From the sequence record NC_019407.1: a stretch of 64,000 bases of DNA; one strand, given 5' to 3'. This document shows, piece after piece, positions 6,258 to 62,143 of the stretch. A program made the position numbers and the translations under genes. Within the stretch, counting starts at the first letter, position 1; the number at the start of each line of letters is the position of its first letter. Below the pieces are notes generated by a model. The model searched no databases. It had not been told where the DNA came from and worked only from the letters and a program-made list of their open reading frames with translations.

Positions 6258-6300
6258 CGACACTACGCTTTGGGTTCTTGTATTGTCAACACATCACTTC
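6258..6300 (-). promoter_or_regulatory. Sigma70-type promoter for the NAD operon
   Basis: GTGTTGACA-N18-TAGTGT. Confidence 0.7.
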
Positions 6301-6767
6301 AGGAGCTTGAGGGCCGGGGCGTGATATTTGAACCCCGCCTCGCTAATCGGCCCCACGCCCACGAAGGTGATGGTCGGCTTGCCGAACACCGTGCGGCCCG
6401 CGTCGAGGACGAGGGTCGCGCCGGCATGGTCGCGGAACCGCTCATAGAGGGCTTCCAACTCGGCGTTGGTCCCGGCGTGGAGCGCGATCTTCACGGCCGA
6501 CTGCGAGTAGCGGTATTGCCGCGCGATCCTGGGGAACCGCTCCATGGCGTCCCACCACGCATGGAGGTAGGCGTGGCCGGCCTGAGCCGCGAGCTTGCCC
6601 AGGTTGAGGGATTTCTCGTCCGGCTTGCGGCGGCTCTTGGCCACGGTCATCGCGTCGAGCGCTTCCTGGCTCACGACGGCGTAGAGGCGCAGTTCGGCCT
6701 TAGGCTTGCCGGCGAAGACCGCCATCAGAGAGTCCCAGGCGTTGCGCCAAGCGTCGATCACGTTCAT
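6294..6767 (-). CDS. Peptidyl-tRNA hydrolase, Pth2 family
   Basis: GKLAAQAGHA, KIAL, DAGRTVF..PTITFVGVGP motifs. Confidence 0.88.
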   Translation of the reverse strand: MNVIDAWRNAWDSLMAVFAGKPKAELRLYAVVSQEALDAMTVAKSRRKPDEKSLNLGKLAAQAGHAYLHAWWDAMERFPRIARQYRYSQSAVKIALHAGTNAELEALYERFRDHAGATLVLDAGRTVFGKPTITFVGVGPISEAGFKYHAPALKLLK

Positions 6768-7207
6768 GAAAAGCGGCTTTCGTAGGAGGCCTCCAGGGCG
6801 ATCGCCGCGTCGAAGGCGACGTCGATGAGGTCCTCGTGCATGAGAACATCGAAGGAGCGGTCGACCCGGAGGGCGAACTGGGCTTCCATCGAGCGGTTGA
6901 AGCCCAGGAGGTCCTTGTGGAGCCCTGCCATGCGGTCCAGGAGCTTGATCGCATAGACGTCCGGCCCGAAGGTCCCTCGCGTCTGATGCAGGCGCTTCTT
7001 GACGTCGTTGATCGTCTCCCAGGACTTGACCTTCAAGTCCTCCATGAGGTCGGCCTGCTGCTCGACCCGGATCAGGTGACGCAGCAGCCGCCGGAGCCGG
7101 GCCTGGATTTGATCAGGCGGGGCCGACGGCGGAGGAGCGCGACACTCCTCTGCCTCGGTGGCGATCATCTGACGCGCCCGGTTGACGCAGTCGAGGATCG
7201 AAGCCAT
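6764..7207 (-). CDS. Hypothetical protein, 147 aa, helical
   Basis: Start and stop overlap both neighbours. Confidence 0.7.
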   Translation of the reverse strand: MASILDCVNRARQMIATEAEECRAPPPSAPPDQIQARLRRLLRHLIRVEQQADLMEDLKVKSWETINDVKKRLHQTRGTFGPDVYAIKLLDRMAGLHKDLLGFNRSMEAQFALRVDRSFDVLMHEDLIDVAFDAAIALEASYESRFS

Positions 7208-7632
7208 CAGCCCTCGGCGGCCGGCGCTTCCGGCTCAGCGGTGGTCTTGCCCTTGCCCTTGCTCGCCGGCGCGGCCTGGGCTTCTTCCGCCGCCGGCTCG
7301 GCGATGGGCGCGGGGGCTTCCACCACCGGTTCGGCGTCCGCAGCCGCCTCGACCGGCGTGTAGTCGGCCTCGAACGCGGCTGGCTTCAGGATGGCGATCT
7401 CGTAGGTGTCCTCGCCGCGCGGGATGCGGACGATGTAGTCGTCCTGGGTCGCCGAGGCGATCTGGCCGTTGATCGGGACCAGGAGCTTGCCGACGGCGTC
7501 CTTGCCGACGTGCATGGTCCCCATGGCGGTGTAGCCCGAGTGCTGGGTCAGCCACGCCGGCAGGTCTTCCAGGCGCTGGAAGCTGTACTGGACGGCGTCC
7601 ACGGTCACCGGTTGGCGGATATACTGGGTCAT
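7207..7632 (-). CDS. Hypothetical phage protein with an Ala/Pro/Glu-rich tail
   Basis: YIRQPVTVDAVQY and DYIVR..F..Y pattern common in phage proteins. Confidence 0.75.
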   Translation of the reverse strand: MTQYIRQPVTVDAVQYSFQRLEDLPAWLTQHSGYTAMGTMHVGKDAVGKLLVPINGQIASATQDDYIVRIPRGEDTYEIAILKPAAFEADYTPVEAAADAEPVVEAPAPIAEPAAEEAQAAPASKGKGKTTAEPEAPAAEG

Positions 7633-8231
7633 GCGGTCTCCTGCTGGAGGTTAGCCGGCGCCGGGATGGCGTCGGAAAGGGCTTGCTCGACCAGGACCAG
7701 GATGTCCATGACGAGCTTGGGATTGAGGTCGGGCTCGGTGAGCGCGGCGGCCAGGGCGTTGATCCGGAACCACGTCGGGTCGGCGTGCGGGATCAGATTG
7801 AGATTGTGCAGGTGCAGCAGCGTCGAGCCGTGGGAGGCGGTCCGCTCCGAAAGCTCGCGCAGCACGCGGGCGCCGGCGAGTTGGTCGGCCAGGACCTTGA
7901 TCACGCTGCCCGAGGGAGCCAGGAGCAGGCGCATCCAGTCGCCGTTCGGATCGTCGGCTTGGCGCAGGTCCGGATGGTCCAGCGTCTTGCCCCAGATCAC
8001 CTCGTGCGCCTTGGCGGCCAGCGAGCGGCGGCGGCGGGCGAGGTCTTCGGCGTCCTTGGCGGCGCGCAGGCTGGAAAGCGTCGTGGCGATCAACACCGAG
8101 GGAAAGAGCGCGACGACGAAGAACGCGGCGCGCTCAAGCGGCGAGGCGTGCGAAGCCACGATATTCATGACCGTGCCGATCAGCACCGTCGGATAGATCA
8201 AGCCGCCGTGGCGCTGGATGAACGAGATCAT
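7629..8231 (-). CDS. Membrane protein, 200 aa
   Basis: Two N-terminal hydrophobic segments; first gene after the promoter at 8287. Confidence 0.75.
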   Translation of the reverse strand: MISFIQRHGGLIYPTVLIGTVMNIVASHASPLERAAFFVVALFPSVLIATTLSSLRAAKDAEDLARRRRSLAAKAHEVIWGKTLDHPDLRQADDPNGDWMRLLLAPSGSVIKVLADQLAGARVLRELSERTASHGSTLLHLHNLNLIPHADPTWFRINALAAALTEPDLNPKLVMDILVLVEQALSDAIPAPANLQQETA

Positions 8232-8306
8232 GAAAAGGGCCTCCGGCGTTGTCGTCGGAGGCCCTTCTAGCGAGTCGGTGTCAGGCTGTCAACACATGTC
8301 AGCCAG
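8229..8306 (-). promoter_or_regulatory. Conserved promoter plus terminator-like leader hairpin
   Basis: CTGGC-N6-GTGTTGACA-N17-TAGAAG-GGCCTCCG-ACGACAACGC-CGGAGGCCC-TTTTC-ATG. Confidence 0.88.
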
Positions 8307-11403: not shown

Positions 11404-12636
11404 CTAGCCCTTCACGCAGAGGACTTGCTTGAGGGTGTGGACGATGTCCACGAGGTCCTTCTGGGCCTCCATGACCGCGTCGATGTCCTTGTAGGCCATC
11501 GGGATTTCGTCGATCACGCCAGCGTCCTTACGGCACTCCACGCCCTCGGTGGCCTTGATCTGGTCCTCCAGGGTGAAGGTCGCCTTGGCCTGGGTCCGCG
11601 ACATCGTCCGGCCCGCGCCGTGCGAGCACGAGCAGAACGAGTCCGCATTGCCCTTGCCGCGCACGATGTAGGACTTGGCCCCCATCGAGCCGGGGATGAT
11701 CCCGAACTGGTCCTTCTGCGCCGACACCGCGCCCTTGCGGGTCACGAAGACCCACTCGTCGAAGTGGAATTCCTTCTGGACGTAGTTGTGGTGGCAGTTC
11801 ACCGCTTCCTTGTCCGTCTTGAACGGCGGCAGGCCCGACGCCCGCATGGCCTCCAGGACCCGGACCATCATCATCTCGCGGTTGATCCGCGCGAAGTCCT
11901 GGCCCCAGGCGACGGCTTCCACGTAGTCGTGGAACTCCGGTTCGCCTTCGCAGAGCCAAGCAAGGTCCTTGTCCAGCGGCTTGCGCCCGTCACGCCGCAG
12001 CATCATCTCCTTGGCCTTCTCGATGAAGATACGGCCGATGGTGTTGCCGACGCCGCGCGAGCCCGAGTGGAGCATCACCCAGACGCGCTGGTCCTCGTCG
12101 AGGCAGACCTCGATGAAGTGGTTGCCGCCGCCCAGGGTGCCCAGTTGGACCACGCTGTTGGCGTTCTTCAGCGCCGGGTACTTCTCGCAGAGCTTGTCGA
12201 ACCGCGCCTCCAGGCCCGAGTCGACCCACTTGCGCAGGATCGAGTTGGGGATGCCGCTGCGCCCGTTCCAGCCGCCCGACGGACCCGGCCCGCCGTGCGG
12301 GACGGCGTGCTCGATCAGCGAGCGAAGCTTGGACAGGCTGTCGGGAAGGTCCGACGCGGTCAGGCTGGTGCGGACCGCCATCATGCCGCAGCCGATGTCG
12401 ACGCCGACGGCGGCCGGGATGATCGCGCCCTTGGTCGGGATCACCGAGCCCACGGTCGAGCCGATGCCCATGTGGACATCCGGCATCAGGGCGACGTGCG
12501 AGTGGATGAAGGGCAAGGCCGCGAGGTTGTGGGCCTGGACCTGAGCCGGTTGCTCGAAGTTCACGCCGCGAACCCAGGCCTTGATCACCCCGCCATTCCA
12601 GCCGTTGATCTCTTCGTAATGGGTCTCGGCGGACAC
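11404..12636 (-). CDS. rtcB: RNA 3'-phosphate/5'-OH ligase RtcB
   Basis: MPDVHMG, GVDIGCGM, GTLGGGNHFIE, HSGSRG, HHNY, RKGA, PGSMG, SHGAGR, DEIPMAYK. Confidence 0.96.
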   Translation of the reverse strand: MSAETHYEEINGWNGGVIKAWVRGVNFEQPAQVQAHNLAALPFIHSHVALMPDVHMGIGSTVGSVIPTKGAIIPAAVGVDIGCGMMAVRTSLTASDLPDSLSKLRSLIEHAVPHGGPGPSGGWNGRSGIPNSILRKWVDSGLEARFDKLCEKYPALKNANSVVQLGTLGGGNHFIEVCLDEDQRVWVMLHSGSRGVGNTIGRIFIEKAKEMMLRRDGRKPLDKDLAWLCEGEPEFHDYVEAVAWGQDFARINREMMMVRVLEAMRASGLPPFKTDKEAVNCHHNYVQKEFHFDEWVFVTRKGAVSAQKDQFGIIPGSMGAKSYIVRGKGNADSFCSCSHGAGRTMSRTQAKATFTLEDQIKATEGVECRKDAGVIDEIPMAYKDIDAVMEAQKDLVDIVHTLKQVLCVKG

Positions 12637-12640
12637 GGCG

Positions 12641-12710
12641 GGCTCCTTCTGTGGTGTCGTGATTTACGACTTTTGACCATGCTCCTCGGACGGTGTCAAC
12701 ACTTCTTCAA
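12641..12710 (-). promoter_or_regulatory. Promoter dedicated to rtcB
   Basis: GTGTTGACA-N17-TCAAAA...ACGACAC...AGAAGGAG before the GTG start. Confidence 0.65.
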
Positions 12711-12879
12711 CGGCGGTGATCTGAATTTGCAGCAGACTGGCCGCCGGGTGGCTGGGCGGAAGAAGCGCCTCGGCCTGTTTCATCGCGTCCAGGGTGTCTT
12801 CCAGCGCGGCGCGGAAGGTGTTGCGCTGCTCGGTGGTGGCGCGGACGGCGGAGGGAAATTCGAAGATCATGGGGATCAC
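12664..12879 (-). CDS. Hypothetical protein, about 70 aa
   Basis: Between a terminator and rtcB; its 3' end contains the rtcB promoter. Confidence 0.55.
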   Translation of the reverse strand: MIPMIFEFPSAVRATTEQRNTFRAALEDTLDAMKQAEALLPPSHPAASLLQIQITAVEEVLTPSEEHGQKS

Positions 12880-14872: not shown

Positions 14873-15159
14873 CAGGCCGCGAGCCCGCGCTGCTTCAAGG
14901 CGACGATCTGCTCGATCTCCTTGAGGATGTGGTCCGACAGGCGGTCGGTCCGTTCCTTGATGCCGGCCGGGACGCCGATCTTGCACTGACCGATCTCGTG
15001 CAGGCGGTCGGAGACGGCCTTCAGGTCGATCAGGGTGTCGCTGATCAGCACCTCGGCGAGGCCGATGGCCTCGGTCTGGATGGCGGCGATCCGCTGGGCG
15101 GTGGTCTGCGCCGATTGGCCCGCGACGAGGGCCAGGGCGGCGTTGTTCTTCTGGGTCAT
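14872..15159 (-). CDS. Hypothetical protein, 95 aa
   Basis: First gene after the promoter at 15212; SD AAGGAG. Confidence 0.8.
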   Translation of the reverse strand: MTQKNNAALALVAGQSAQTTAQRIAAIQTEAIGLAEVLISDTLIDLKAVSDRLHEIGQCKIGVPAGIKERTDRLSDHILKEIEQIVALKQRGLAA

Positions 15160-15162
15160 GGA

Positions 15163-15230
15163 GTCTCCTTCGTTGTCGTCGGGCGTGACTTCTAGTTGGG
15201 TTCCTGGAGGCTGTCAACACTTTCGCTCAC
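15163..15230 (-). promoter_or_regulatory. Conserved promoter
   Basis: GTGTTGACA-N17-TAGAAG-N9-ACGACAACGAAGGAG. Confidence 0.85.
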
Positions 15231-15787: not shown

Positions 15788-17205
15788 ATCAGCGCTCCTT
15801 GGCTCGGATCGGCCGGCGCGTAGACGGCGCGGTTGATGGTGGTCTCCGGCTCGCCCGAGCGCTTGTTGGCGCCGTGACGCTTGATCGTGGCCCGGATGGC
15901 GTAGCGCTTGCCGGCCTCGGGACGGTACTTGCCGGTGTGGAAGTTCACCACCGCCGAGCCGTCATCGCAGCGGATGGCCACGATGCAGGTCGTCTCGCCG
16001 AAGTCGTTGGTGTAGAGGTTGGTCCGCACGACCTCGCCCACGAAGTCCACGCGCTGGCCCTCGGCGGCGTCGAGGTGCTTGGCAGGAGGGCGCTGGGGAG
16101 CGTCGGCCTTCTTGCGGGCGTCCTCCTCGCGCTCCAGGGCGCGGCCGACCGACAGACCGACAGCGGCGACGATCACCCCGATGCGCTTGACCAGGACGAA
16201 ATCTTCCTGGGCGAGCACCATCTTGATGTTCTCGTGGAACGGATTGCCCGGCTTCAGCGAGCGGATGTAGTCGGTGAAGCCCTCGCGGTCGAATTCCGGC
16301 TCGAAGCCCTTGTAGGAGTCGATGATCTCCTGGTTGCGCTTGCGCTCGTAGTCCGACAGGCCATAGCCCCGGTTGCCGAACATCAGCAGGCCGACATGCT
16401 TGCGCGAGTCTTCCTTGCTGTAGCCGCCGAGCCGGCGCGCCACGCGGTACGAGGTCCGCAGGAGTTCGCCCAGATCGACGTACTCCTCGCCCTTGCGCCA
16501 GCCGCCCGGATCACCCTTGAAGTTGTTCAGGTCATCCCAGAACGACAGCATGCGGACCGGATCGGCCCCCATATAGGCTTTCAGGCACGAGGCCCCGATC
16601 ATCTTGATCCCGTCGGCGGTCTCGCAGACGAAGGTGTGTTTGCGGCGCTGGTTGACGCCGCAGTGGGCGCACTCGCCAGCGTGTACACGCATCCCTTCCA
16701 CGACGTCGTTGGCGGTCTTGTCGACCAGCTTGAGGTAGTGCCCCGTCTTCTCGGCGGCTTCGTAGATGCCCAGGACGCGGCCCTTCTCGCCGACCATCGG
16801 CGGAACCGACAGGGTGATCTCGATGCGGCGCACCACCATGGCCTCGTCGCTCAGATAGGGCGAGGGAATGTCGACCACCTTGCGCTCCAGGACCTCCAGG
16901 GTCTGGGCGCCGTGGGCGGCCCGCTTCTGGAGCTTGGCCAGCAGGCGCATGAAGCGTTCCTCGACGGCGAAGCCCATCATGAAGGTCAGGACGGCTTGGC
17001 CGTCGCGCACGCCTTCCTGGGCCTCCCACATGGCGGTCCGGTGAGCCTCGCGCTCCTGCTCGCCCTCGAAGATCGACACGCCCCTGGCGGTCACGACCTC
17101 GACGCCGTCGACCAGCACGCTGGCCTGATCGGCGACCGTCTCGGGACGCTCACCGTAGGTTTCCAGCATGTAGTCCTGGTAGCTGCCTTCGAATTCGCCA
17201 AACAT
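15784..17205 (-). CDS. Hypothetical protein, 473 aa, with a central Cys motif and a putative C-terminal OB-fold
   Basis: CAHC...RR..TF....IGASCL; C-terminal beta-rich FVGEVV...YAIRATIKRH...TTINR; first gene after a promoter. Confidence 0.8.
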   Translation of the reverse strand: MFGEFEGSYQDYMLETYGERPETVADQASVLVDGVEVVTARGVSIFEGEQEREAHRTAMWEAQEGVRDGQAVLTFMMGFAVEERFMRLLAKLQKRAAHGAQTLEVLERKVVDIPSPYLSDEAMVVRRIEITLSVPPMVGEKGRVLGIYEAAEKTGHYLKLVDKTANDVVEGMRVHAGECAHCGVNQRRKHTFVCETADGIKMIGASCLKAYMGADPVRMLSFWDDLNNFKGDPGGWRKGEEYVDLGELLRTSYRVARRLGGYSKEDSRKHVGLLMFGNRGYGLSDYERKRNQEIIDSYKGFEPEFDREGFTDYIRSLKPGNPFHENIKMVLAQEDFVLVKRIGVIVAAVGLSVGRALEREEDARKKADAPQRPPAKHLDAAEGQRVDFVGEVVRTNLYTNDFGETTCIVAIRCDDGSAVVNFHTGKYRPEAGKRYAIRATIKRHGANKRSGEPETTINRAVYAPADPSQGALI

Positions 17206-17210
17206 GATCG

Positions 17211-17277
17211 GCTCCTCTCGCTGTCGTGAGGGAGCTTGTACGGGCTCACGCCGATGCTGTCAACACTCTAACGCCAA
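17211..17277 (-). promoter_or_regulatory. Conserved promoter with an SD-occluding hairpin
   Basis: TTGGC-N6-GTGTTGACA-N17-TACAAG; GCTCCCTC-ACGACAGC-GAGAGGAGC. Confidence 0.85.
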
Positions 17278-20140: not shown

Positions 20141-20499
20141 TGGTCCGACACCTTCGCCAGTTGCTTTTCCAGTTCGGCGCGCAGTTCGGCGGTGCTCAGG
20201 CCCAGGCGCTCCTTCATGAACGCCACCGCCTCGGCGGCGGTCTCGAACGAGCGGGTCTCGGCATCGGTGCTGTCGCGCAGGCCGAGGATTTCGACCACGC
20301 CCCAGATCGTCGCCCAGGCGACGGCGATCAAGGCCGCCACCGTGATGGCAAAGCCGAAGTTGAACTGGCGCGCGGCGCTCAGTTCCACCGCCTCGGCCGC
20401 CGTCCAGGCCACTGCGACCATGCTCACGGAGGCGAGATGGAGCAGGGCGCCCCTGCGGGTGTGGGTCGGGCGGACGGTCAGGGTCATCTTGTCTTGCAC
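20137..20499 (-). CDS. Membrane protein, 120 aa (GTG start)
   Basis: GAGGAG SD before GTG at 20499; two hydrophobic segments. Confidence 0.7.
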   Translation of the reverse strand: MQDKMTLTVRPTHTRRGALLHLASVSMVAVAWTAAEAVELSAARQFNFGFAITVAALIAVAWATIWGVVEILGLRDSTDAETRSFETAAEAVAFMKERLGLSTAELRAELEKQLAKVSDQ

Positions 20500-20502
20500 G
20501 AG

Positions 20503-20573
20503 GGTCTCCTCTGCGGTTGTCGTCGCCCGCCTCTTAGGCCAAGGCCGAAGCCTTGTCAACACATTCAAGCCAA
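20503..20573 (-). promoter_or_regulatory. Conserved promoter with a cUUCGg hairpin in the spacer
   Basis: TTGGC-N6-GTGTTGACA-AGGCTTCGGCCTTGGCC-TAAGAG-N7-ACGACAA. Confidence 0.85.
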
Positions 20574-22278: not shown

Positions 22279-22448
22279 CGCAGTAATTCTCCGTCGGCGA
22301 TCCGGATGTCGCTCAGGGGATAGTCCTGGAAGAAGGCGCGCAGCCGCTGGCGCAGCATCCCCTCGACAGCCTCGGCATTGTTCAAGGTCTCGAAGAGGTC
22401 CTCGAACATCTGGCGCTCATTGGCGCGTAAGGGTCGGGTCTTCGGCAC
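22275..22448 (-). CDS. Small protein, 57 aa (MPKTRPLRANERQMFEDLF...)
   Basis: AAGGAGG SD before GTG, directly after the promoter at 22499; stop overlaps the next start; not in the ORF track. Confidence 0.75.
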   Translation of the reverse strand: MPKTRPLRANERQMFEDLFETLNNAEAVEGMLRQRLRAFFQDYPLSDIRIADGELLR

Positions 22449-22450
22449 GG

Positions 22451-22518
22451 GACCTCCTTCGTTGTCGTCATGCGGCTTCTAGGGCGTCTTTGCCGGATTG
22501 TCAACACATTCCAGCCAG
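22451..22518 (-). promoter_or_regulatory. Conserved promoter
   Basis: CTGGC-N6-GTGTTGACA-N17-TAGAAG-N7-ACGACAACGAAGGAGG. Confidence 0.88.
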
Positions 22519-23325: not shown

Positions 23326-24343
23326 CGGCGACCTCCTCGACCTCTTCCTCGCTCGGGGCGATCGTCGAGCCCGAATATTCCTGGAGGTGGTCGACCGCCT
23401 TCTGGGCCAGCGACGCGGCGGTGAAGATGAAGCGCTTATCGCCCTTCAGGACCTTCAGCCAGGAGGCGACGTAGGAGGCGTGGTCTTCGCGGACTTCCGG
23501 GGTCAGGCCGAGGATGGCGCAGAGGAAGGCCGAGCCCAGTTCGGCGACCAGTTCCTCGGCGGCGTAGGCCTCGTCACCGAAGCGCTTGCCGAACTCGCGG
23601 TTCAGGCGGTCCTCGCGACCTGTCCAGTGGACGAACTCGTGGCCGAGGGTGGCGTAGTAGCTCTCCTCGTCGCGGAAGGCGTCGAACTGGGGCATCTGGA
23701 TGAAGTCCAGGTGCGGCGAGAAGAAGGCCCGGTGACCGCCGTGGCGCACCTCGGCGCCCGTGGCGGCGAAGAACTTCTCGACCGCCGCGTTGCGCTCCAG
23801 GACCCGCTTGGCTTCCTCGGCGGGCGTCGCCGGCGCCGGGGCGGGCTTCTGGTAGAAGCGCTCGGGCAGGCCGTCGATCTGCTCGACATTGAACACCAGA
23901 TAGGACTTCAGGAACGGGATCATCCGTTCGACGTCCTTGCCGTTGGAGTCCTTCTCGGTCTTCTTGAACTTCGAGGCGTAGACGATCAGTTCGGACTTCT
24001 CGCCCTTGCGGACCTGACCACCCAGGTCCCTGGCTTGGTTGTAGGTCATCCAGGTCGGGTTGGTGTAGCCGCGCTCCTGGGCGGCGGCCCATAGGAGGAC
24101 CACGTTGATCCCGGTGTAGCGCTGGCCGGTCACCCGGCGGGGATAGATCGCCATGCCGGCCGAGGCGCCGCCGGGAGCCGACCACGGCTTCAACCAGGGA
24201 CGCACGCCAGCGTCGAGGGCGGCGACGATCTTGTCGGTGATCTTCTGATAGAGATCGACCTTGACGGTTTCGGTCGAGGCCTTGCCGGTCTCCTTGGTGG
24301 AGCACTTGGCGGGCTTCTTCTTGGCGGCGGTGGTCTTGGTCAT
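23312..24343 (-). CDS. ardC: ArdC-family antirestriction / ssDNA-binding protein (N-terminal ArdC domain plus zincin-like domain)
   Basis: DLYQKITDKI..AL.AG..PW.KPW, Y.GIN..LLW, W.TYNQA..LGGQVRKGEK, Y.VFN.EQ.DGLP, HEFVHWTG...RL.R, YA.EELVAELGSAFL. Confidence 0.92.
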   Translation of the reverse strand: MTKTTAAKKKPAKCSTKETGKASTETVKVDLYQKITDKIVAALDAGVRPWLKPWSAPGGASAGMAIYPRRVTGQRYTGINVVLLWAAAQERGYTNPTWMTYNQARDLGGQVRKGEKSELIVYASKFKKTEKDSNGKDVERMIPFLKSYLVFNVEQIDGLPERFYQKPAPAPATPAEEAKRVLERNAAVEKFFAATGAEVRHGGHRAFFSPHLDFIQMPQFDAFRDEESYYATLGHEFVHWTGREDRLNREFGKRFGDEAYAAEELVAELGSAFLCAILGLTPEVREDHASYVASWLKVLKGDKRFIFTAASLAQKAVDHLQEYSGSTIAPSEEEVEEVADAAA

Positions 24344-24346
24344 CAG

Positions 24347-24413
24347 GACCTCCTCGTTGTCGTCGAGGGGGTTCTAGCCGGCGACCGCGACCTTGTCAAC
24401 ACTCTCGCGCCAG
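24347..24413 (-). promoter_or_regulatory. Conserved promoter for ardC, with SD hairpin
   Basis: CTGGC-GCGAGA-GTGTTGACA-N17-TAGAAC-CCCCTCG-ACGACAA-CGAGGAGG. Confidence 0.88.
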
Positions 24414-29008: not shown

Positions 29009-29011
29009 AAG

Positions 29012-38405: not shown

Positions 38406-38426
38406 CTTCCCCTCGAATTTGGCGGC

Positions 38427-38534: not shown

Positions 38535-38540
38535 CCTGCC

Positions 38541-47433: not shown

Positions 47434-47660
47434 TCGAGCACGTCTGGCGCCGTGATCCGCGCGGTCCCGCCTATGGCTTCCAGCGCCTGGACCTGGACGA
47501 GGCCCTGAAGATCGTCGCGGTCGAGAAGCAGGACTTCCTCCTCCATCTGGTCGCGGTCTTGCACGAGAACAACCTCCTGCGCGACGCCGACGTCATGGAA
47601 CTGCTCGGCAAGGGCTGGGCGCTCGACTCCTACGACCTCCATCACATCGACGACGATTAG
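47430..47660 (+). CDS. Hypothetical protein, 76 aa
   Basis: ATGA overlap. Confidence 0.65.
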   Translation: MIEHVWRRDPRGPAYGFQRLDLDEALKIVAVEKQDFLLHLVAVLHENNLLRDADVMELLGKGWALDSYDLHHIDDD

Positions 47661-47663
47661 GCG

Positions 47664-47714
47664 TTGACAACACTCTCGCGCCAACATAGAACCGCCCTCG
47701 ACGACAACGAGGAG
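47664..47714 (+). promoter_or_regulatory. Promoter with the upstream box inverted in the spacer
   Basis: TTGACA-ACACTCTCGCGCCAACA-TAGAAC-N8-ACGACAACGAGGAGG. Confidence 0.85.
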
Positions 47715-47720
47715 GCTTCG

Positions 47721-48104
47721 ATGAAACTCGCGACCCAAGACCGCACCGATCCGCGCCTGAACGCGCGCTACCGTCTCGCCAAGGCGGTGTTCTATTACGG
47801 CGGCCCGCACGAGTACCCGATCCACCTGAACGACTGGTGGAACGAGGTGACGCCGGCCGACGTCGAGGACCGCATCTCCGAACTCTGCCGCGAACTGTCC
47901 AAGCTGTCGGGCCAGACCCTGGCGCCGGCGACCTTCTACGAGCGGATGAAGCTGGGCTTCGTCGACCTCCCGGAAGTGAAGGACGAGGACTTCGCCGCCC
48001 TGTCGGAGACGACCCGCAACAACCTGCTCGCCATGCAGGACCGCTTCTCGGTCCACGGGAGCGGCTTCATGCTCTACTGGAACATCGTCAAAGAGGAGGC
48101 CTGA
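47721..48104 (+). CDS. Hypothetical protein, 127 aa (MKLATQD...)
   Basis: GAGGAGG SD after the promoter. Confidence 0.8.
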   Translation: MKLATQDRTDPRLNARYRLAKAVFYYGGPHEYPIHLNDWWNEVTPADVEDRISELCRELSKLSGQTLAPATFYERMKLGFVDLPEVKDEDFAALSETTRNNLLAMQDRFSVHGSGFMLYWNIVKEEA

Positions 48105-49165: not shown

Positions 49166-49230
49166 CTGGCGTTCTTGTGTTGACAAGGCCGGCGCCGCTG
49201 GCCTAGAACGTCGTGGACGACAACAGGAGG
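49166..49230 (+). promoter_or_regulatory. Conserved promoter
   Basis: CTGGC-N6-GTGTTGACA-N18-TAGAAC-N7-ACGACAACAGGAGG. Confidence 0.85.
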
Positions 49231-49234
49231 GACC

Positions 49235-49591
49235 ATGCCGCTCTACGACTTTCCGACCGGACCGACCACGATGGAGGACATCGAGGCGTTCGTCGCCGGC
49301 GCCCAGGCGGTGGTGACCGCCCAACTGGCCAAGGCCTTTCCCGGCGTGTCCGCGCCGGTCCTGGAGATCGCGCCGGTTCACCCGAGCAGCCAGTTCGCCA
49401 AGATCGTCGCGGTCGACGCCAGCCAGCGCTCGGCCTGGGCGTTCGTCCGACTGGAGAACGGCCTGATCTACAAGCCCTCGTCGTGGAAGGTGCCGGCCAA
49501 GCATGCGCGTGGCACGATCCACACCGCCGCGCACGGCGCCGAGTACGTCGACTGGACCGGCCCGCGCTACGTGAAGGACCTGCGTCGATGA
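49235..49591 (+). CDS. Conserved phage protein of unknown function
   Basis: KIV.....SAWAFV...G.IYKPSSWK.PAKHARG.I.......WTGPRY. Confidence 0.8.
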   Translation: MPLYDFPTGPTTMEDIEAFVAGAQAVVTAQLAKAFPGVSAPVLEIAPVHPSSQFAKIVAVDASQRSAWAFVRLENGLIYKPSSWKVPAKHARGTIHTAAHGAEYVDWTGPRYVKDLRR

Positions 49592-56875: not shown

Positions 56876-56942
56876 TTGGCGTTAGAACGTTGACAGCCTC
56901 GGCGTGATGTCATAAAAGCCTCCTCGACGACAACGAGGAGGC
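56876..56942 (+). promoter_or_regulatory. Conserved promoter with a perfect 9-bp SD-occluding hairpin
   Basis: TTGGC-N6-ACGTTGACA-N17-TAAAAG; GCCTCCTCG-ACGACAA-CGAGGAGGC. Confidence 0.88.
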
Positions 56943-56946
56943 CCAC

Positions 56947-57366
56947 ATGGCTTACGCAATTCCGGACCTGAGCACGTTCACGTTCCACGACCCCAAGGTC
57001 GAACGGTTCGCCAAGGCGATGATCTCGACGATCGAGACTGCTCAGACCATCCTCACGGCCTTCGCCAACGATCTCGCCGACAATCCTCTTCAGGCGTTCG
57101 AGCATAGCTACGGCGCCAAGATGGCCGCCGCCCACAGGGACGTCGCCAAGGGGCTGCTCAACGAGGTTCTCGACGCGCTGCTGCACGGTCAGGACAAGAC
57201 CTGGGCCTACATCGGCCAGGACCTGCGCGAGCGGCTGATGTATCGCGTGATCTACGCGGCCTCGAACCCGCCGCGCTCGACCAACGTCGAAGGCAACGAC
57301 ATGGCCCGCTTCGTCCTGCGCGCCGAGGCCGACATGCTCGACCGCATGACCAAGAGCCGCTTCTGA
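56947..57366 (+). CDS. Hypothetical helical protein, 139 aa
   Basis: First gene after the promoter. Confidence 0.8.
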   Translation: MAYAIPDLSTFTFHDPKVERFAKAMISTIETAQTILTAFANDLADNPLQAFEHSYGAKMAAAHRDVAKGLLNEVLDALLHGQDKTWAYIGQDLRERLMYRVIYAASNPPRSTNVEGNDMARFVLRAEADMLDRMTKSRF

Positions 57367-58278: not shown

Positions 58279-58344
58279 TTGGCGTTCAAGTGTTGCCAAG
58301 CCTCTCGGCTTGCGCTACACCCATCGTCGACGACAACGAGGAGG
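58279..58344 (+). promoter_or_regulatory. Conserved promoter (TTGCCA variant)
   Basis: TTGGC-N6-GTGTTGCCA-N17-TACACC-N8-ACGACAACGAGGAGG. Confidence 0.82.
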
Positions 58345-58350
58345 CCCCCC

Positions 58351-58545
58351 ATGCCACACCTGAGCAAGACGCCGTTCGACTTCGACTTCACCAGTGACGC
58401 TTTGGCGGCAACGCTGGAATTCGAGCGCAACACCGCCGAGTTCTACCGCTACGAGACAGTCTTCACATCCGGTCGTGCGGCAATCCACGTTCTCGTCATG
58501 GAAGAAGACGGGAATTTCGTCGGCTTCGTCTCGGGTGAAGCCTGA
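58351..58545 (+). CDS. Small protein, 64 aa (MPHLSKT...)
   Basis: GAGGAGG SD after the promoter. Confidence 0.72.
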   Translation: MPHLSKTPFDFDFTSDALAATLEFERNTAEFYRYETVFTSGRAAIHVLVMEEDGNFVGFVSGEA

Positions 58546-59479: not shown

Positions 59480-59522
59480 CTGGCTTCAGTGTGTTGACGG
59501 CGCGTCGATCGCCCGCTAAGAA
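59480..59522 (+). promoter_or_regulatory. Conserved promoter lacking the ACGACAA element
   Basis: CTGGC-N6-GTGTTGACG-N17-TAAGAA. Confidence 0.72.
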
Positions 59523-59580
59523 GGGCTGACGGTCACGCTCTGGCTGCATGAATTTTCAATCCGAAAGGGGCCTTAAGTCC

Positions 59581-61611
59581 ATGGATTTCCACGTCTTTAA
59601 GACGGCTGTCGCCAAGCAGTGGGCCGCGATGACCAAGGGTGACGCGACCTTGTTCCGCGTCGACGTCGACAAGGACCTCCTGTGGTCGACCTACCTGAAG
59701 GCGTTCCCGGCCGGGACCGATCCGATCTTCCGCGAGCGCTCCGAGCACGACTGCTCGTGCTGCCGCAACTTCATCCGAAACGCCGGCGACGCCGTGGCGG
59801 TGGTCAACGGCCAGATCGTCACGATCTGGGACTGGCCGATCGAGGGCGAGCCGGCCTATCAGCAGGTCTCCCAGACCCTGGCGGCGCTGGTCCGTTCGCG
59901 CCCGGTGCGCGACATCTTCCTGCACGACCAGAAGACCATCGGGACCGACAAGAACGTCGAGACCATGCTGGGCGGCGACGTCACCTGGAACCACTTCTTC
60001 GTCAATGTCCCCTCGCGCTTCGTCAAGAAGGGTAAGGACATCCCGACCGCGCTCCACATCCCGCGCACCGCGCAGGAGACGCTTCTGCGCGCCGTGACCG
60101 AGATCACCGACGAGGCGATCGACACGGTGCTGGACCTGATCGCCCAGAACGCGCTCTATCGCGGGGCCGAACACAAGTCGGCGGTGGTGGCGTTCCAGAA
60201 GGCCAAGAAGACCTTCGAGGGCCTGTCGGCCGCCGACAAGGCGCTGAAGGCCTGGGTCAACGTCGCGAGCGGTGAAATCTGGGGCTCGGTCTCGGGCATC
60301 CGGAGCACGGTGATCGGCTCGCTGCTGGTCGACCTGTCGGCTGACGTCGACCTGGAGGACGCGGTCAAGAAGTTCGAGGCCAAGGTCGCGCCGCACAACT
60401 ACAAGCGCACGACCGCCCTGGTGACCAAGAAGCAGATCGAGAACGCCAAGAAGACGATCTCCGACCTGGGCCTGACCTCGGCCCTGGAGCGGCGCTACGC
60501 CGTCCTCAAGGACGTGTCGATCAACGACGTGCTGTTCGCCGACCGCGACGCCAAGTCGGTGATGAACGACGTCTTCGACGATCTGGCCGCCGACGTCGCC
60601 GAGAAGACCAAGTCCTACGACAAGGTCGAGGAGGTCTCGATCGACAAGTTCCTGTCCGACATCCTCCCGAGGGTGTCGAGCGTCGAGGCCCTGGTCGAGA
60701 ACCGCCTGACGAGCAATTTCGTCAGCCTGATCGCGCCGGTCGATCCGACCGCCGGCTCCCTCTTCAAGTGGGGGAACAACTTCTCCTGGTCCTATGCCGG
60801 GGAGGTGGCGGACTCGATCAAGGCCCGCGTCAAGGCGGCCGGCGGCAACGTCACCGGCGATCTCTGCTGCCGTCTGGCGTGGTTCAACTATGACGACCTC
60901 GACTTCCACATGAAGGAACCGGGCGGCAACCTGATCTACTTCCGCCAGAAGTCCTCGCCCTACACGGGCGGGCGCCTCGACGTCGACATGAACGCCGGCG
61001 GGGGCCATACCCGCGAGCCGGTCGAGAACATCTTCTACGGCGATCGCCGGACGATGAAGGAAGGCGTCTACGAACTGATGGTCCATCAGTTCAGCAAGCG
61101 CGAGTCCAGCAACGTCGGCTTCGAGGTGGAGATCGACTACCTGGGCTCGATCACCCGCTATGCCTACACCACCGCCCTGCGCCCGGATCAGGTCGTCAAG
61201 GTGGCGCAGTTCAAGTACAGCCACGCGCGCGGCATCGAGTTCATCTCCTCGCTTCCGGCCTCGTCGGCGAGCAAGGACGTCTGGGGCGTCAAGACCGAGA
61301 CCTTCCGCAGGGTCAACGTCATCATGCTCTCGCCCAACCACTGGGAAGGCGAGCCGGGCGTGGGGAACAAGCACTGGTTCTTCATGCTGGACGGGGGCGT
61401 CAACGAGGACGGCGCCCGTGGCTTCTACAACGAGTTCCTGAAGGACAGCCTCACGCCCCACCGTCGCGTCTTCGAGATGCTGGGGTCCAAGCTGAAGCCC
61501 GCGCCGGCGGCGGAACAACTCTCCGGCCTGGGCTTCTCCTCGACCAAGCGCGACGAACTCGTCGTGCGCGTCAAGGGGGCCTTCACCCGTACCCTCAAGA
61601 TCAAATTCTAA
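59581..61611 (+). CDS. Large conserved phage protein (676 aa; alternative start 59548) with an N-terminal Cys/His motif and a C-terminal YfaP/DUF2135-like domain
   Basis: EHDCSCCRNF; LAWFNYDDLDFHM.EP.G..IYF......GG.LDVDMN.G....PVENI. Confidence 0.78.
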   Translation: MDFHVFKTAVAKQWAAMTKGDATLFRVDVDKDLLWSTYLKAFPAGTDPIFRERSEHDCSCCRNFIRNAGDAVAVVNGQIVTIWDWPIEGEPAYQQVSQTLAALVRSRPVRDIFLHDQKTIGTDKNVETMLGGDVTWNHFFVNVPSRFVKKGKDIPTALHIPRTAQETLLRAVTEITDEAIDTVLDLIAQNALYRGAEHKSAVVAFQKAKKTFEGLSAADKALKAWVNVASGEIWGSVSGIRSTVIGSLLVDLSADVDLEDAVKKFEAKVAPHNYKRTTALVTKKQIENAKKTISDLGLTSALERRYAVLKDVSINDVLFADRDAKSVMNDVFDDLAADVAEKTKSYDKVEEVSIDKFLSDILPRVSSVEALVENRLTSNFVSLIAPVDPTAGSLFKWGNNFSWSYAGEVADSIKARVKAAGGNVTGDLCCRLAWFNYDDLDFHMKEPGGNLIYFRQKSSPYTGGRLDVDMNAGGGHTREPVENIFYGDRRTMKEGVYELMVHQFSKRESSNVGFEVEIDYLGSITRYAYTTALRPDQVVKVAQFKYSHARGIEFISSLPASSASKDVWGVKTETFRRVNVIMLSPNHWEGEPGVGNKHWFFMLDGGVNEDGARGFYNEFLKDSLTPHRRVFEMLGSKLKPAPAAEQLSGLGFSSTKRDELVVRVKGAFTRTLKIKF

Positions 61612-61630
61612 CGGAAGGACCTGAAAGACC

Positions 61631-62053
61631 ATGAGCACCGACCTCTTCGAAATCGCCGCGCGCGAGAAGTTCCGCTTCGACAGCCCCAAGGGTCTCCTGG
61701 GCGTGGAAGAACTGTTCGACCTGCCGCTGACCAGCACCGTCGCCGGCAAGGCCAACCTGAACGACATCGCCGTCGACCTGTTCAAGCAGATCAAGGACCT
61801 CGACAACATCTCGTTCGTCACGCCCAAGAAGGTCGACCCCTCGATCGGTCAGCGCCTGGACATCGTCAAGCGGGTGATCGAGATCAAGCAGGCCGAGAAC
61901 GCGGCAAAGCTGAAGACCGCCCAGGACAAGGAGACCCTGCGCATCCTCGACGAGGCGATCGCCGCCAAGAAGTCCGAGAAGATCGCCGGCACCTCGCTGG
62001 AAGACCTGGAAGCCCAGCGCGCGGCCCTGCTCTCGGGCGGCGCCTCGGCCTAA
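61631..62053 (+). CDS. Conserved phage protein, 140 aa, probable partner of the upstream gene
   Basis: LFEIAAREKFRF.S.KG.L..EELFDLPL; coiled-coil C-terminus. Confidence 0.78.
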   Translation: MSTDLFEIAAREKFRFDSPKGLLGVEELFDLPLTSTVAGKANLNDIAVDLFKQIKDLDNISFVTPKKVDPSIGQRLDIVKRVIEIKQAENAAKLKTAQDKETLRILDEAIAAKKSEKIAGTSLEDLEAQRAALLSGGASA

Positions 62054-62079
62054 GCCTCCGGGCAGGCTGACATAGGCGC

Positions 62080-62143
62080 TTGACAACACTCTCGCGCCAA
62101 CATAGAAGGGCCTCCGACGACAACGCCGGAGGCCCTTTTCATG
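62080..62143 (+). promoter_or_regulatory. Promoter with inverted box in the spacer, plus the 41-nt hairpin cassette
   Basis: TTGACA-ACACTCTCGCGCCAACA-TAGAAGGGCCTCCGACGACAACGCCGGAGGCCCTTTTCATG. Confidence 0.88.

What the first reader, a model, noticed from the sequence alone, without database searches (positions are those of the whole stretch)
6258..62143. Three-part promoter code repeated about 21 times: TGGC box, -35/-10, and a fixed ACGACAA at the transcript start
Seen in the sequence: 12 leftward promoters (-35 regions near 6284, 8287, 12694, 15212, 17258, 20554, 22499, 24394, 25844, 29061, 30573, 34800) and 9 rightward ones (38479, 40653, 43805, 47664, 49177, 56890, 58293, 59491, 62080) share TTGAC(A/G) or TTGCCA, then N17/18, then a TA(G/A)A(A/G)-like -10. 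By my count 15 have TGGC exactly 6 nt before the (G/A)(T/C)G that precedes the -35. 19 have ACGACA(A/G/C) 7-10 nt after the -10 hexamer (a few nt later at 34800), just ahead of the SD. At 6284 the same offset is occupied by an ATG, which points to a leaderless mRNA and suggests the motif begins at about +1. Inference: host sigma70 promoters carrying a dedicated upstream operator or activator site (about -48 to -36) and a standardised 5' end. The 5' motif could control promoter escape, 5'-end protection or binding of a phage RNA-binding protein. I know of no named function for this combination.
Basis: partly seen in the sequence, partly recalled or inferred. Interest (0 to 1): 0.82.

Follow-up and report, generated by a model that had tools for sequence, protein, structure and literature searches.

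The report
Standardised early promoter cassettes, phiCbK-like phage
The window, from Caulobacter phage Magneto, holds 21 copies of one strong early-promoter cassette read by the host's housekeeping RNA polymerase, each with two extra conserved blocks (an upstream TGGC element and a fixed GACGACAAC at the transcript start) whose roles are untested and, as far as my searches show, undescribed.

Summary
The window is Caulobacter virus Magneto, bases 124001-188000. All 21 sites exist at the stated places. Fifteen carry TGGC at the fixed offset and 19 carry ACGACA(A/G/C) 7-9 nt after the -10 (13 nt at one site). Shuffled sequence gives about none.

The -35 and -10 match the Caulobacter RpoD consensus. 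Host 5'-RACE geometry puts +1 at the G or first A of GACGACAAC. That would give a U-free, unstructured 19-25 nt leader with a strong Shine-Dalgarno sequence.

Genome-wide there are about 25 copies, all between 113 and 192 kb. This block includes the known early gene tgrL.

The same code occurs in Karma, Rogue and CcrBL10. The +1 block also occurs in Brevundimonas phages, and as GACGATCA in the Colossus group.

The TGGC-N6-GTG element also occurs inverted inside the spacer of three promoters with the same positions conserved. This points to a protein site rather than an UP element.

The phage GcrA and the XRE protein TgrL were tested as binders and are not supported.

Verdict: a real, apparently undescribed variant of phage early promoters. 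The function of the two extra blocks is inferred, not shown.

The parts
56..107 (-). Extra site at the window edge. -35 TTGACA 94-89, -10-like CAAATG 70-65, then ATG 58-56 directly followed by ACGACAG 55-49. Candidate leaderless start of gp152. A terminator-like hairpin lies just upstream.
6249..6302 (-). Promoter without the +1 block. -35 6289-6284, -10 TAGTGT 6265-6260, annotated ATG of gp162 at 6251, 8 nt after the -10. Leaderless or near-leaderless candidate. CTGA replaces TGGC.
8229..8305 (-). Full cassette. TGGC 8305-8302, -35 8292-8287, -10 8269-8264, GACGACAACG 8256-8247, ATG 8231 (gp166). Terminator-like hairpin GGGCCTCCG..CGGAGGCCC-TTTT spans the +1 block and the SD.
12634..12712 (-). 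Cassette without TGGC. -35 12699-12694, -10 CAAAAG 12675-12670, CACGACACCA 12661-12652, GTG 12636 (gp176, RtcB-like ligase).
15157..15230 (-). Cassette without exact TGGC. -35 15217-15212, -10 15194-15189, GACGACAACG 15180-15171, ATG 15159 (gp181).
17203..17276 (-). Full cassette. TGGC 17276-17273, -35 17263-17258, -10 TACAAG, CACGACAGCG 17228-17219, ATG 17205 (gp184).
20497..20572 (-). Full cassette. TGGC 20572-20569, -35 20559-20554, -10 TAAGAG, GACGACAACC 20524-20515, GTG 20499 (gp191).
22446..22517 (-). Full cassette. TGGC 22517-22514, -35 22504-22499, -10 TAGAAG, GACGACAACG 22469-22460. The geometry points to GTG 22448 as the start of gp195 (annotated at 22409).
24341..24412 (-). Full cassette. 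TGGC 24412-24409, -35 24399-24394, -10 TAGAAC, GACGACAACG 24364-24355, ATG 24343 (gp199, anti-restriction protein).
25791..25862 (-). Full cassette, variant. TGGC 25862-25859, -35 TTGACG 25849-25844, -10 TAGAAG, AACGACACCA 25814-25805, GTG 25793 (gp204).
29006..29079 (-). Cassette with CTGA instead of TGGC. -35 29066-29061, -10 TAGTGT, GACGACAACG 29029-29020, ATG 29008 (gp212).
30518..30591 (-). Full cassette. TGGC 30591-30588, -35 30578-30573, -10 TAAAAG, GACGACAACA 30541-30532, ATG 30520 (gp215).
34743..34818 (-). Full cassette with a variant +1 block. TGGC 34818-34815, -35 34805-34800, -10 TAGAGC, GTCGACACAACGACAG, GTG 34745 (gp225). The operon includes tgrL (gp223, 33108-33485), a published early gene.
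38403..38455 (-). Related leftward promoter of the gp230/GcrA-like operon. -35 TTGTCA 38455-38450 is the reverse complement of the tandem TTGACA copy. -10 TAGGGT 38432-38427, no +1 block, ATG 38405.
38469..38543 (+). Full cassette, first rightward promoter. TGGC 38469-38472, -35 38482-38487, -10 TAGGGG, GACGACAACG 38518-38527, ATG 38541 (gp231).
40643..40717 (+). Full cassette. TGGC 40643-40646, -35 40656-40661, -10 TAAAGA, GACGACAGCG 40692-40701, TTG 40715 (gp239).
43795..43869 (+). Full cassette. TGGC 43795-43798, -35 43808-43813, -10 TATACC, GACGACAACG 43845-43854, ATG 43867 (gp245).
47651..47723 (+). Inverted-element cassette. -35 47664-47669. The spacer ACACTCTCGCGCCAACA is the reverse complement of TGGCGCGAGAGTG(TTG). 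-10 TAGAAC, GACGACAACG 47700-47709, ATG 47721 (gp252).
49167..49237 (+). Full cassette. TGGC 49167-49170, -35 49180-49185, -10 TAGAAC, GACGACAACA 49216-49225, ATG 49235 (gp256).
56877..56949 (+). Full cassette. TGGC 56877-56880, -35 56890-56895, -10 TAAAAG, GACGACAACG 56926-56935, ATG 56947 (gp274). A 7-9 bp anti-SD/SD hairpin surrounds the +1 block.
58280..58353 (+). Full cassette. TGGC 58280-58283, -35 TTGCCA 58293-58298, -10 TACACC, GACGACAACG 58329-58338, ATG 58351 (gp278).
59481..59583 (+). TGGC/-35/-10 without the canonical +1 block. TGGC 59481-59484, -35 TTGACG 59494-59499, -10 TAAGAA, then GACGGTCACG and a leader of about 50 nt before ATG 59581 (gp282).
62067..62143 (+). Mosaic cassette. 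The -35-to--10 part is identical to 47664 (inverted element in the spacer). The downstream part is identical to 8287, including the terminator-like hairpin. GACGACAACG 62116-62125, ATG 62141 (gp284). The equivalent hairpin is annotated as a rho-independent terminator in the phiCbK record.

Best explanation
These are copies of one family of strong early promoters of a phiCbK-like phage, used by the unmodified host RNA polymerase with its housekeeping sigma factor (RpoD, sigma-73).

Each copy is a compact expression cassette of about 75-95 bp. In order it holds:
1. (C/T)TGGC-N6-GTG.
2. A perfect TTGACA.
3. A 17-18 nt spacer.
4. (GC)TAGAAG.
5. A 6-8 nt C-rich discriminator.
6. GACGACAAC(G)A.
7. 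GGAGG.
8. 5-8 nt, then the start codon.

How it most likely works:
- The near-consensus hexamers let the cassettes fire as soon as the DNA enters the cell, without an activator.
- Transcription starts at the G or first A of GACGACAAC.
- Every operon therefore receives the same 19-25 nt leader. It is U-free, structure-free and has a strong Shine-Dalgarno sequence.
- I take the fixed +1 block to be mainly a cis-acting start-site and initial-transcribed element. It would let polymerase leave a very tight promoter and let ribosomes load at once.
- The TGGC-N6-GTG element abutting the -35 is a separate, sequence-specific protein site. Most likely it turns the class down later in infection.

Shown: the motif family, its statistics, its genomic restriction, its conservation pattern, and its match to the RpoD consensus.

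Inferred: the start site, early timing for all copies, and the role of the two extra blocks.
For: Promoter identity:
- The match to the published Caulobacter RpoD consensus is close: -35 TTGaCgS and -10 GCtANAWC against TTGACA(A/G) and GCTAGAAG.
- A perfect TTGACA is rare in the host RpoD-motif table, at 37 occurrences in the whole file. It is present in 19 of the 21 phage sites.
- In that host 5'-RACE table the -35 T lies at -34 to -38, mostly -35 to -37. This places +1 on the G (offset 35-37) or the first A of GACGACAAC.

Placement and timing:
- All sites sit in short intergenic gaps upstream of co-oriented genes. Leaders are 19-25 nt.
- Genome-wide the 23-24 sites with the +1 block all lie between 113,060 and 192,434 of 218,929 bp. 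None is in the structural or replication modules, which use a different promoter family.
- tgrL, shown by RNA-seq to peak at 15 min, lies in the operon behind the 34800 promoter.

The +1 block goes with the promoter, not the ribosome site:
- No copy precedes a promoter-less SD.
- The block is retained where the leader is long and no SD follows, at genome 188570 and its orthologues.
- The late-gene promoter family shows no conserved leader.

Leader properties:
- T is absent at nearly all of the 16 positions from the A of the motif to the SD, including the variable ones.
- Predicted primary transcripts are unstructured, with a mean of -3.2 kcal/mol.

Selection rather than recent copying (13 orthologous pairs, Magneto against Rogue or CcrBL10):
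- Far upstream 41% identity; spacer 56%.
- TGGC box 78%; GTG 79%; -10 82%; discriminator 76%; +1 block 93%.
- The -35 and the first six bases of the +1 block were selection criteria, so their identities (99% for the -35) are not independent evidence.

Distribution in other phages:
- The code occurs in Karma (11 exact hits), Rogue (11) and CcrBL10 (13). All other viral-contig hits are singletons.
- The +1 block also occurs in Brevundimonas phage Bambus (TGACGACAA) and as GACGATCA in Colossus and CcrPW.

The TGGC element as a protein site: three promoters carry its reverse complement inside the spacer. Each scores 18.4 bits, as high as normal copies. In their orthologues the variable and conserved positions mirror those of the normal orientation.
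Against: - No transcript 5' end has been mapped in any phiCbK-like phage that I could find. The start site is therefore geometric inference.
- Early timing is documented for one operon only. The per-gene phage table of the RNA-seq paper is not in the held copy.
- An invariant 8-9 nt block is more conservation than an unstructured, U-free leader or a good escape sequence would need. That degree of conservation is typical of recognition by a macromolecule.
- Colossus-group phages infect the same host yet use GACGATCA. This argues against a purely host-dictated optimum beyond GACGA.
- Several promoters with the same -35/-10 lack the +1 block (6284, 59491, the rIIA promoter and others). It is therefore not required for promoter function.
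- About 9 of 23 sites can form an anti-SD/SD hairpin with the +1 block as the loop. The simple cis model explains this only as an add-on.
Confidence: 0.6

Rival explanations
1. The +1 block is the recognition site of a dedicated trans-acting factor that treats the early class as a unit. The factor could be a DNA-binding repressor sitting on +1 to +10 to shut early transcription off. It could instead be an RNA-binding protein or nuclease that recognises the common 5' end of early mRNAs.
For: - Seven to nine positions are invariant in more than 20 paralogous sites and across phage genera.
- A lineage-specific variant, GACGATCA, occurs in Colossus and CcrPW on the same host.
- The block is restricted to one promoter class.
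- Early genes peak at 15 min and then decline.
- Promoters with the same hexamers but no block exist and could escape such control.
- Gill et al. note that the phage's homologue of T5 A1 may alter transcription, and that T5 A1 mutants fail to shut off pre-early genes.
Against: - No factor has been identified.
- The TgrL matrix does not fit, and there is no GANTC for GcrA.
- The core is asymmetric with no consistent dyad, unlike most dimeric operators.
- The idea that one factor binds ACGAC here and GTCGTG upstream of the second promoter family fails in Colossus. There the second family reads GCCAGGAATC.
Confidence: 0.3
2. The cassettes are mobile promoter/terminator modules of the PeSL type. 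Their uniformity would be kept by copying and gene conversion, and their main evolutionary effect would be to provide homology patches for shuffling small genes.
For: - Three promoters share an identical -35-to--10 segment (47664, 62080, genome 188570). Sites 8287 and 62080 share an identical downstream segment, so 62080 is a mosaic.
- The Rogue orthologue of gp274 carries a different cassette type from Magneto.
- One Magneto/phiCbK breakpoint lies 12 nt into the gene behind the 58293 promoter.
- Hairpins that could stop upstream transcripts lie in some cassettes, and one is annotated as a terminator in phiCbK.
- The region is rich in small genes of unknown function.
Against: - Only about 1 of 7 Magneto/phiCbK breakpoints is next to a cassette, which is roughly chance.
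- Most spacers are unrelated between copies while the blocks are conserved. That is selection on the blocks, not recent copying.
- There is no AT-rich upstream region, and hairpins occur in fewer than half of the sites.
Confidence: 0.2
3. The functional unit is an RNA hairpin: an anti-SD arm, the loop ACGACAA and an SD arm. It would hide the ribosome site or be bound by a protein, in the manner of boxB, in transcripts that read through from upstream.
For: - CCTC-type anti-SD sequence occurs in the discriminator of about 12 of 23 sites, and clear hairpins in about 9.
- Stems differ between sites while the loop is constant.
- In a permutation test only 6 of 300 shuffles of the 5' arms between sites reached the observed mean stability.
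Against: - More than half the sites have no stem.
- With the start at the G, the 5' arm is not in the primary transcript.
- CCTCG is kept at genome 188570, where no SD partner follows.
- No Rfam family matches in the window.
Confidence: 0.1
4. The promoters depend on the phage GcrA homologue with CcrM methylation, or on the phage XRE protein TgrL, binding the TGGC or +1 blocks.
For: - Both proteins are encoded in the window.
- TgrL is early and mostly a repressor of host genes.
Against: - GANTC occurs in 4 of 23 promoters at no fixed position, which is the genome-average density.
- The published TgrL matrix gives 128 hits against 95-129 in shuffles, and only 3 lie within 70 bp of these promoters.
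- GANTC is instead invariant in the other promoter family.
Confidence: 0.03

Closest known systems
Caulobacter RpoD (sigma-73) housekeeping promoters
   Same: -35 TTGaCgS, -10 GCtANAWC, 17-18 nt hexamer spacing, and the -35 T lying 35-37 nt upstream of the start.
   Different: Host promoters rarely carry a perfect TTGACA. I found no report of a fixed +1 block or a TGGC-N6-GTG element in them. Host start-region sequences could not be scanned here.
PeSL cassettes (promoter-early stem-loop) of T4-type phages (PMC2839356, PMC4122927)
   Same: Both are many copies of a strong sigma-70-type early promoter in regions rich in small genes of unknown function. Both are sometimes joined to a stem-loop that can stop upstream transcription, and both show signs of copying and mosaicism between copies.
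   Different: PeSLs have an AT-rich upstream region and a regular G/C stem-loop, and they sit at indel boundaries. Here the upstream element is TGGC-N6-GTG, the hairpin is optional and lies between the -10 and the SD, there is a fixed +1 block, and breakpoints are not enriched.
Early promoters of coliphages T4 and T5 (from my own knowledge, not checked here)
   Same: They are host-polymerase promoters with consensus extended beyond the hexamers. In T5 the transcribed region contributes to promoter strength and clearance.
   Different: Those extensions are A/T-rich and loosely conserved. Here a GC-rich genome keeps an exact 9 nt block at +1 and a bipartite GC-rich upstream element.
Start-associated sequences of cluster K mycobacteriophages and stoperators of cluster A mycobacteriophages (PMC12699233, PMC9283540, PMC6550527; listed, details from my own knowledge)
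   Same: Both are short asymmetric motifs repeated 10-30 times per genome, in short intergenic gaps, always oriented with transcription, next to ribosome sites or promoters.
   Different: Stoperators are repressor sites of temperate phages that block elongation. Start-associated sequences include the ribosome site itself. Here the motif is tied to the transcription start of a lytic phage's early promoters, and no binder is known.

Membership tests
Caulobacter RpoD (sigma-73) promoter | -35 element TTGaCgS | tested here: met
   TTGACA in 19 of 21 window sites, TTGACG in the two others counted with TTGCCA once, followed by A/G.
Caulobacter RpoD (sigma-73) promoter | -10 element GCtANAWC at a 17-18 nt hexamer spacing | tested here: met
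   T 22/23, A 23/23, A 20/23 and A 16/23 at hexamer positions 1, 2, 4 and 5. C is frequent just upstream. The spacer is 17 nt (16 sites) or 18 nt (7 sites).
Caulobacter RpoD (sigma-73) promoter | Transcript start about 35-37 nt downstream of the -35 T | not testable with these tools
   Geometry puts G/A of GACGACAAC at that offset. No 5'-end data for the phage were found.
Caulobacter RpoD (sigma-73) promoter | Transcribed by RpoD holoenzyme without added factors | not testable with these tools
   This needs in vitro transcription or reporters in uninfected cells.
PeSL-type mobile promoter/terminator cassette | Repeated strong sigma-70-like early promoter | tested here: met
PeSL-type mobile promoter/terminator cassette | Adjacent stem-loop acting as terminator for upstream transcription | tested here: inconclusive
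   Hairpins occur in about 9 of 23 sites. Two have a T-tract, and one equivalent is annotated as a terminator in phiCbK. The rest have none.
PeSL-type mobile promoter/terminator cassette | [quoted passage not shown] | tested here: not met
   The upstream element is TGGC-N6-GTG. There is only a weak T excess about 17-20 nt upstream of the -35.
PeSL-type mobile promoter/terminator cassette | Cassettes lie at insertion, deletion or replacement boundaries between related phages | tested here: inconclusive
   One of about 7 Magneto/phiCbK breakpoints is adjacent to a cassette. There is one promoter swap against Rogue, and mosaic copies occur within Magneto.
GcrA/CcrM-dependent promoter | GANTC methylation site at a fixed promoter-proximal position | tested here: not met
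   Four of 23 sites have one, at varying positions, which is the genome-average density.
TgrL / XRE operator | Match to the ChIP-seq-derived TgrL matrix | tested here: not met
   128 hits against 95-129 in shuffles. Three lie near class I promoters and none lies on the conserved blocks.
Sigma-54 promoter | TGGCAC-N5-TTGC with GG and GC ten bases apart | tested here: not met
   TGGC is followed by TTG two bases too late, and the -12 GC is absent (read from the alignments).
Lambdoid sigma-dependent promoter-proximal pause site | A -10-like element (TAnnnT-like) in the initial transcribed region | tested here: not met
   The region from +1 to the SD contains almost no T.
boxB-like protein-binding hairpin | Stem present in all copies with compensatory changes | tested here: not met
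   No stem in more than half of the sites. No Rfam hit.

The most novel reading that the evidence does not exclude
The two extra blocks would be the cis-sites of a phage-encoded temporal switch acting on the whole early class at once. One protein would bind TGGC-N6-GTG over the -35 in either orientation. A second factor would read the common GACGACAAC, either as DNA at +1 or as the shared 5' end of about 25 early mRNAs. This would be an RNA 'class tag' used for coordinated shut-off, decay or capping, kept across the Dolichocephalovirinae with lineage-specific variants.
Probability: 0.2. Interest if true: 0.7.

Novelty: new variant of a known kind. Interest (0 to 1): 0.45.

Why it matters
- phiCbK is the standard phage of a major model bacterium, yet its promoters have not been described in the papers I could search.
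- A defined early-promoter family gives an operon map for about 80 kb of mostly unknown genes. It corrects some gene starts.
- It provides strong, compact, host-polymerase promoters with a standard leader for use in Caulobacter.
- It sets up a simple testable model of the phage's timing. Three promoter classes would be involved: published CtrA-dependent promoters in the terminal repeats, this RpoD class, and a GANTC-bearing class for replication and structural genes.
- If the +1 block or the TGGC element proves to be a factor site, it would identify how a giant siphophage without its own polymerase switches off its early genes.

Tried and rejected
- **Generic E. coli-type promoter scan.** It found none of the sites in 1-20000, because it demands T at the last -10 position and the phage has G/C there.
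- **Host-genome test of the motif.** No Caulobacter record was listed, so it says nothing about host promoters. The host TSS supplements hold only the 25 nt RpoD motif, not start regions.
- **Per-gene timing.** The phage sheet of the RNA-seq table was cut off in the held copy.
- **TgrL matrix.** No enrichment.
- **GANTC/GcrA.** Absent from this class.
- **Sigma-54 reading of TGGC.** The spacing is wrong.
- **Shared ACGAC half-site between this class and the second promoter family.** Attractive in Magneto, but Colossus has GCCAGGAATC there, so there is no co-variation.
- **RtrC motif.** The sequence is not given in the text of the paper, so this was not pursued.
- **Cassette-mediated shuffling.** Breakpoints against phiCbK are not enriched at cassettes.
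- **Rfam.** No family in the window.
- **Pfam on ten nearby proteins.** Only GcrA, an XRE HTH and two weak winged-helix hits.
- **Literature searches for the motif strings.** They returned only lambda/tac promoter constructs.

Full report
**Identity of the window.** A 12 kb piece of the window is 100% identical to Caulobacter virus Magneto, record positions 160000-172000. The reassembled record confirms that the window is bases 124001-188000 of the 218,929 bp genome. Magneto is a phiCbK-like giant siphophage of the Dolichocephalovirinae. The annotated genes of the window run leftward from about 38.4 kb and rightward from 38.5 kb, and most are hypothetical.

**Check of the observation.**
- All 21 sites are present.
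- ACGACAA occurs 24 times against 4.96 +/- 1.77 in shuffles. Fourteen are at the promoters. Ten lie inside genes, mostly as Asp-Asp-Lys-type codons, without the following CGA-GGAG.
- The strict composite TTGACA-N16-18-TANA-N9-13-ACGACA gives 12 hits against none in 100 shuffles.
- TGGC-N9-TTGAC gives 14 hits against 0.48.
- The information profile extends the consensus: YTGGC(G/T)-N-T-N-(A/G)(A/T)GTG-TTGACA(A/G)-N17/18-(GC)TAGAAG-N6-8 (C-rich)-GACGACAAC(G)A-GGAGG-N5-8-start.

**What kind of promoter.**
- The published consensus for the Caulobacter housekeeping sigma factor is TTGaCgS and GCtANAWC. The phage elements fit it.
- The last -10 position is G/C, not T, which is why a generic E. coli-type scan finds nothing.
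- In a host 5'-RACE table the 5' T of the -35 lies at -34 to -38, mostly -35 to -37. In the phage the G of GACGACAAC lies 35-37 nt from that T.
- The start is therefore most likely that G or the next A, and the leader to the start codon is 19-25 nt.
- At 6284 the annotated ATG of gp162 takes the place of the motif's A. At the left edge of the window a further site has ATG directly followed by ACGACAG, the annotated start of gp152.
- None of this has been measured. I found no 5'-end mapping for any phiCbK-like phage.

**Distribution in the genome.**
- There are 23-24 sites with the +1 block, all between 113,060 and 192,434.
- The structural and replication modules instead carry 19 copies of a second family, AATGTC(G/A)TGAATC-TTGACA. 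It has a GANTC site abutting the -35, a weak -10 and no conserved leader.
- The terminal repeats are known to hold CtrA-dependent promoters.
- The early gene tgrL of phiCbK corresponds to Magneto gp223, shown by a cloning-primer match. It lies in the operon behind the 34800 promoter. RNA-seq shows it peaking at 15 min, and 41% of phage genes are early.

**Distribution in other phages.**
- An exact-pattern scan of viral contigs gives 11, 11 and 13 hits in Karma, Rogue and CcrBL10. Elsewhere there are only singletons in unrelated, mostly AT-rich contigs.
- Colossus and CcrPW, which infect the same host, have TTGAC(A/G)...GTTTCTT-TACA(A/T)C-N7-GACGATCA...GGAG. One promoter there has GACGACAAC.
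- Brevundimonas phage Bambus has TTGACA...TTCCTTTACA...TGACGACAA-GGAGG.
- The core GACGA at the start is therefore shared across the subfamily. The TGGC element is confined to the Magneto/phiCbK/Rogue/CcrBL10 group.

**Selection or recent copying.**
- Thirteen orthologous pairs (Magneto against Rogue or CcrBL10) give these identities: 41% far upstream, 56% in the spacer, 78% in the TGGC box, 79% in GTG, 82% in the -10, 76% in the discriminator and 93% in the +1 block.
- The -35 and the first six bases of the +1 block were selection criteria. The other blocks were not.
- Most paralogous spacers are unrelated. The blocks are therefore kept by selection.
- Copying also happens. Three promoters share an identical -35-to--10 segment, and 62080 is a mosaic of that segment and the downstream half of 8287. 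The Rogue orthologue of gp274 carries a different cassette type.
- Against phiCbK, however, only about one of seven breakpoints lies next to a cassette.

**The TGGC element.**
- A matrix built from the 14 nt upstream of the -35 also scores three promoters on the opposite strand, at 18.4 bits, as high as normal copies. Sites 47664, 62080 and genome 188570 carry TTGACA-ACACTCTCGCGCCAA. This is the reverse complement of TTGGCGCGAGAGTGTTG(T)CAA with one change that restores a perfect -35.
- In the orthologues of these cassettes the changes fall in the central CGCG, which is the variable N6. ACACTCT and GCCA are kept.
- An element constrained in the same way on either side of the -35 is unlikely to be an UP-like contact for polymerase. 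It looks like the site of a sequence-specific protein that overlaps the -35.
- The leftward promoter of the GcrA operon uses the same quasi-palindrome, as TTGTCA-ACACTCG.

**The +1 block.**
- It goes with the promoter, not with the ribosome site. No copy precedes a promoter-less SD.
- It is kept where a long leader follows.
- The late-gene family lacks it.
- From the A of the motif to the SD there is almost no T, even at variable positions.
- Predicted primary transcripts are unstructured.
- About 9 of 23 sites can also form a hairpin with a C-rich anti-SD arm in the discriminator, the block as loop and the SD as 3' arm. Permuting the arms between sites reaches the observed stability in 6 of 300 trials.
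- With the start at the G this hairpin exists only in transcripts reading through from upstream.
- In two sites the hairpin is a canonical terminator shape. The phiCbK record annotates it as such.

**Candidate binders.**
- The phage GcrA homologue and TgrL are encoded in the window.
- GANTC is not conserved in this class.
- The published TgrL matrix is not enriched in the phage and does not fall on the promoters.
- ACGAC also occurs, reversed, upstream of the -35 in the second family, often as CACGAC...GTCGTG dyads. In Colossus that element is GCCAGGAATC. A shared factor is therefore not supported.

**Conclusion.**
- The finding is real and the promoter reading is sound.
- The cassettes are best seen as strong host-polymerase early promoters with a standard start and leader, plus a probable protein site at the -35.
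- Whether the exact +1 sequence serves polymerase escape and translation alone, or is read by a phage factor, cannot be settled by sequence. I give 0.6 to the cis reading as the main role and 0.3 to a dedicated factor.
- I found no earlier description of this family. That holds only for the library searched.

Noticed in passing
Magneto genome outside the window: 19 sites at 18,346-114,460 and 203,737 (record coordinates; loci L003-L006): A second promoter family, AATGTC(G/A)TGAATC-TTGACA(C/T), precedes structural, lysis and replication genes. It has an invariant GANTC (CcrM-type methylation site) abutting the -35 and a weak -10. A GTTAACCAT (CtrA half-site-like) often lies downstream, and an upstream inverted copy (CACGAC...GTCGTG) is frequent. 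Its GANTC context, AGATTCA, is the one reported as lowest-ranked for host GcrA binding. That raises the possibility that it is read by the phage's own GcrA homologue.
   Followed up: partly
window 38403-38455 (-) and 37670-38218 (-): The leftward operon that encodes the GcrA homologue starts from TTGTCA-N17-TAGGGT. Its -35 is the reverse complement of a tandem copy of the rightward TTGACA element. It lacks the +1 block.
   Followed up: partly
window 47664-47692, 62080-62108; genome 188570: Three promoters carry the TGGC-N6-GTG element inverted inside the spacer. Their -35-to--10 segments are identical to each other and nearly so in Karma, Rogue and CcrBL10.
   Followed up: yes
window 22409-22448 (-): gp195 is annotated to start at 22409. 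The promoter, SD and spacing point to the in-frame GTG at 22448, 13 codons upstream.
   Followed up: partly
window 6251-6263 (-): The orthologous gene is annotated with different starts in Magneto (ATG 6251) and phiCbK (a GTG equivalent to 6263). The GTG lies inside the -10 hexamer of the promoter, so the ATG is the better start for transcripts from this promoter.
   Followed up: partly
window 8247-8264 (-) and 62109-62136 (+): An identical terminator-like hairpin, GGGCCTCCG-loop-CGGAGGCCC-TTTT, lies between the -10 and the start codon. Its 5' arm is upstream of the likely start. It would therefore stop read-through transcripts but not transcripts from the promoter itself. The phiCbK record annotates the equivalent as a rho-independent terminator.
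   Followed up: partly
window 19593-23174: A 3.6 kb segment holding two of the promoters is present in Magneto and absent from phiCbK. Smaller Magneto-specific or replaced segments lie at 31733-32003, 46088-46860, 50876-51233 and 58364-58554.
   Followed up: no
window 40715-41734 (+): gp239 is about 85% identical in DNA to Colossus and 82% to CcrPW, although the rest of the 12 kb query has no DNA-level match to those phages. This suggests recent exchange of the gene. Its Colossus promoter has the Colossus-type -10 but the Magneto-type GACGACAAC.
   Followed up: no
window 59524-59580 (+); genome 188606-188662: Two promoters of the family are followed by long leaders of about 50-90 nt without a nearby SD. 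The one outside the window contains a 9 bp hairpin (GTCCGAAAT...ATTTCGGAC) conserved in Karma, Rogue and CcrBL10. No Rfam match.
   Followed up: no
Magneto record 51649 (+), 80524 (-), 112027 (-), 10197 (+): These are further promoters with the TGGC/-35 module but without the +1 block, including the one before rIIA/rIIB. In the site at the edge of the terminal repeat, the TGGC...GTG element lies in the spacer in direct orientation and supplies the -10 (TAAGTG), followed by ACGACAC.
   Followed up: no
window 3137-5823 (-): The phage encodes a nicotinamide phosphoribosyltransferase and a NadM-type adenylyltransferase/Nudix protein (NAD salvage). They lie in the operon behind the leaderless-type promoter at 6284.
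   Followed up: no
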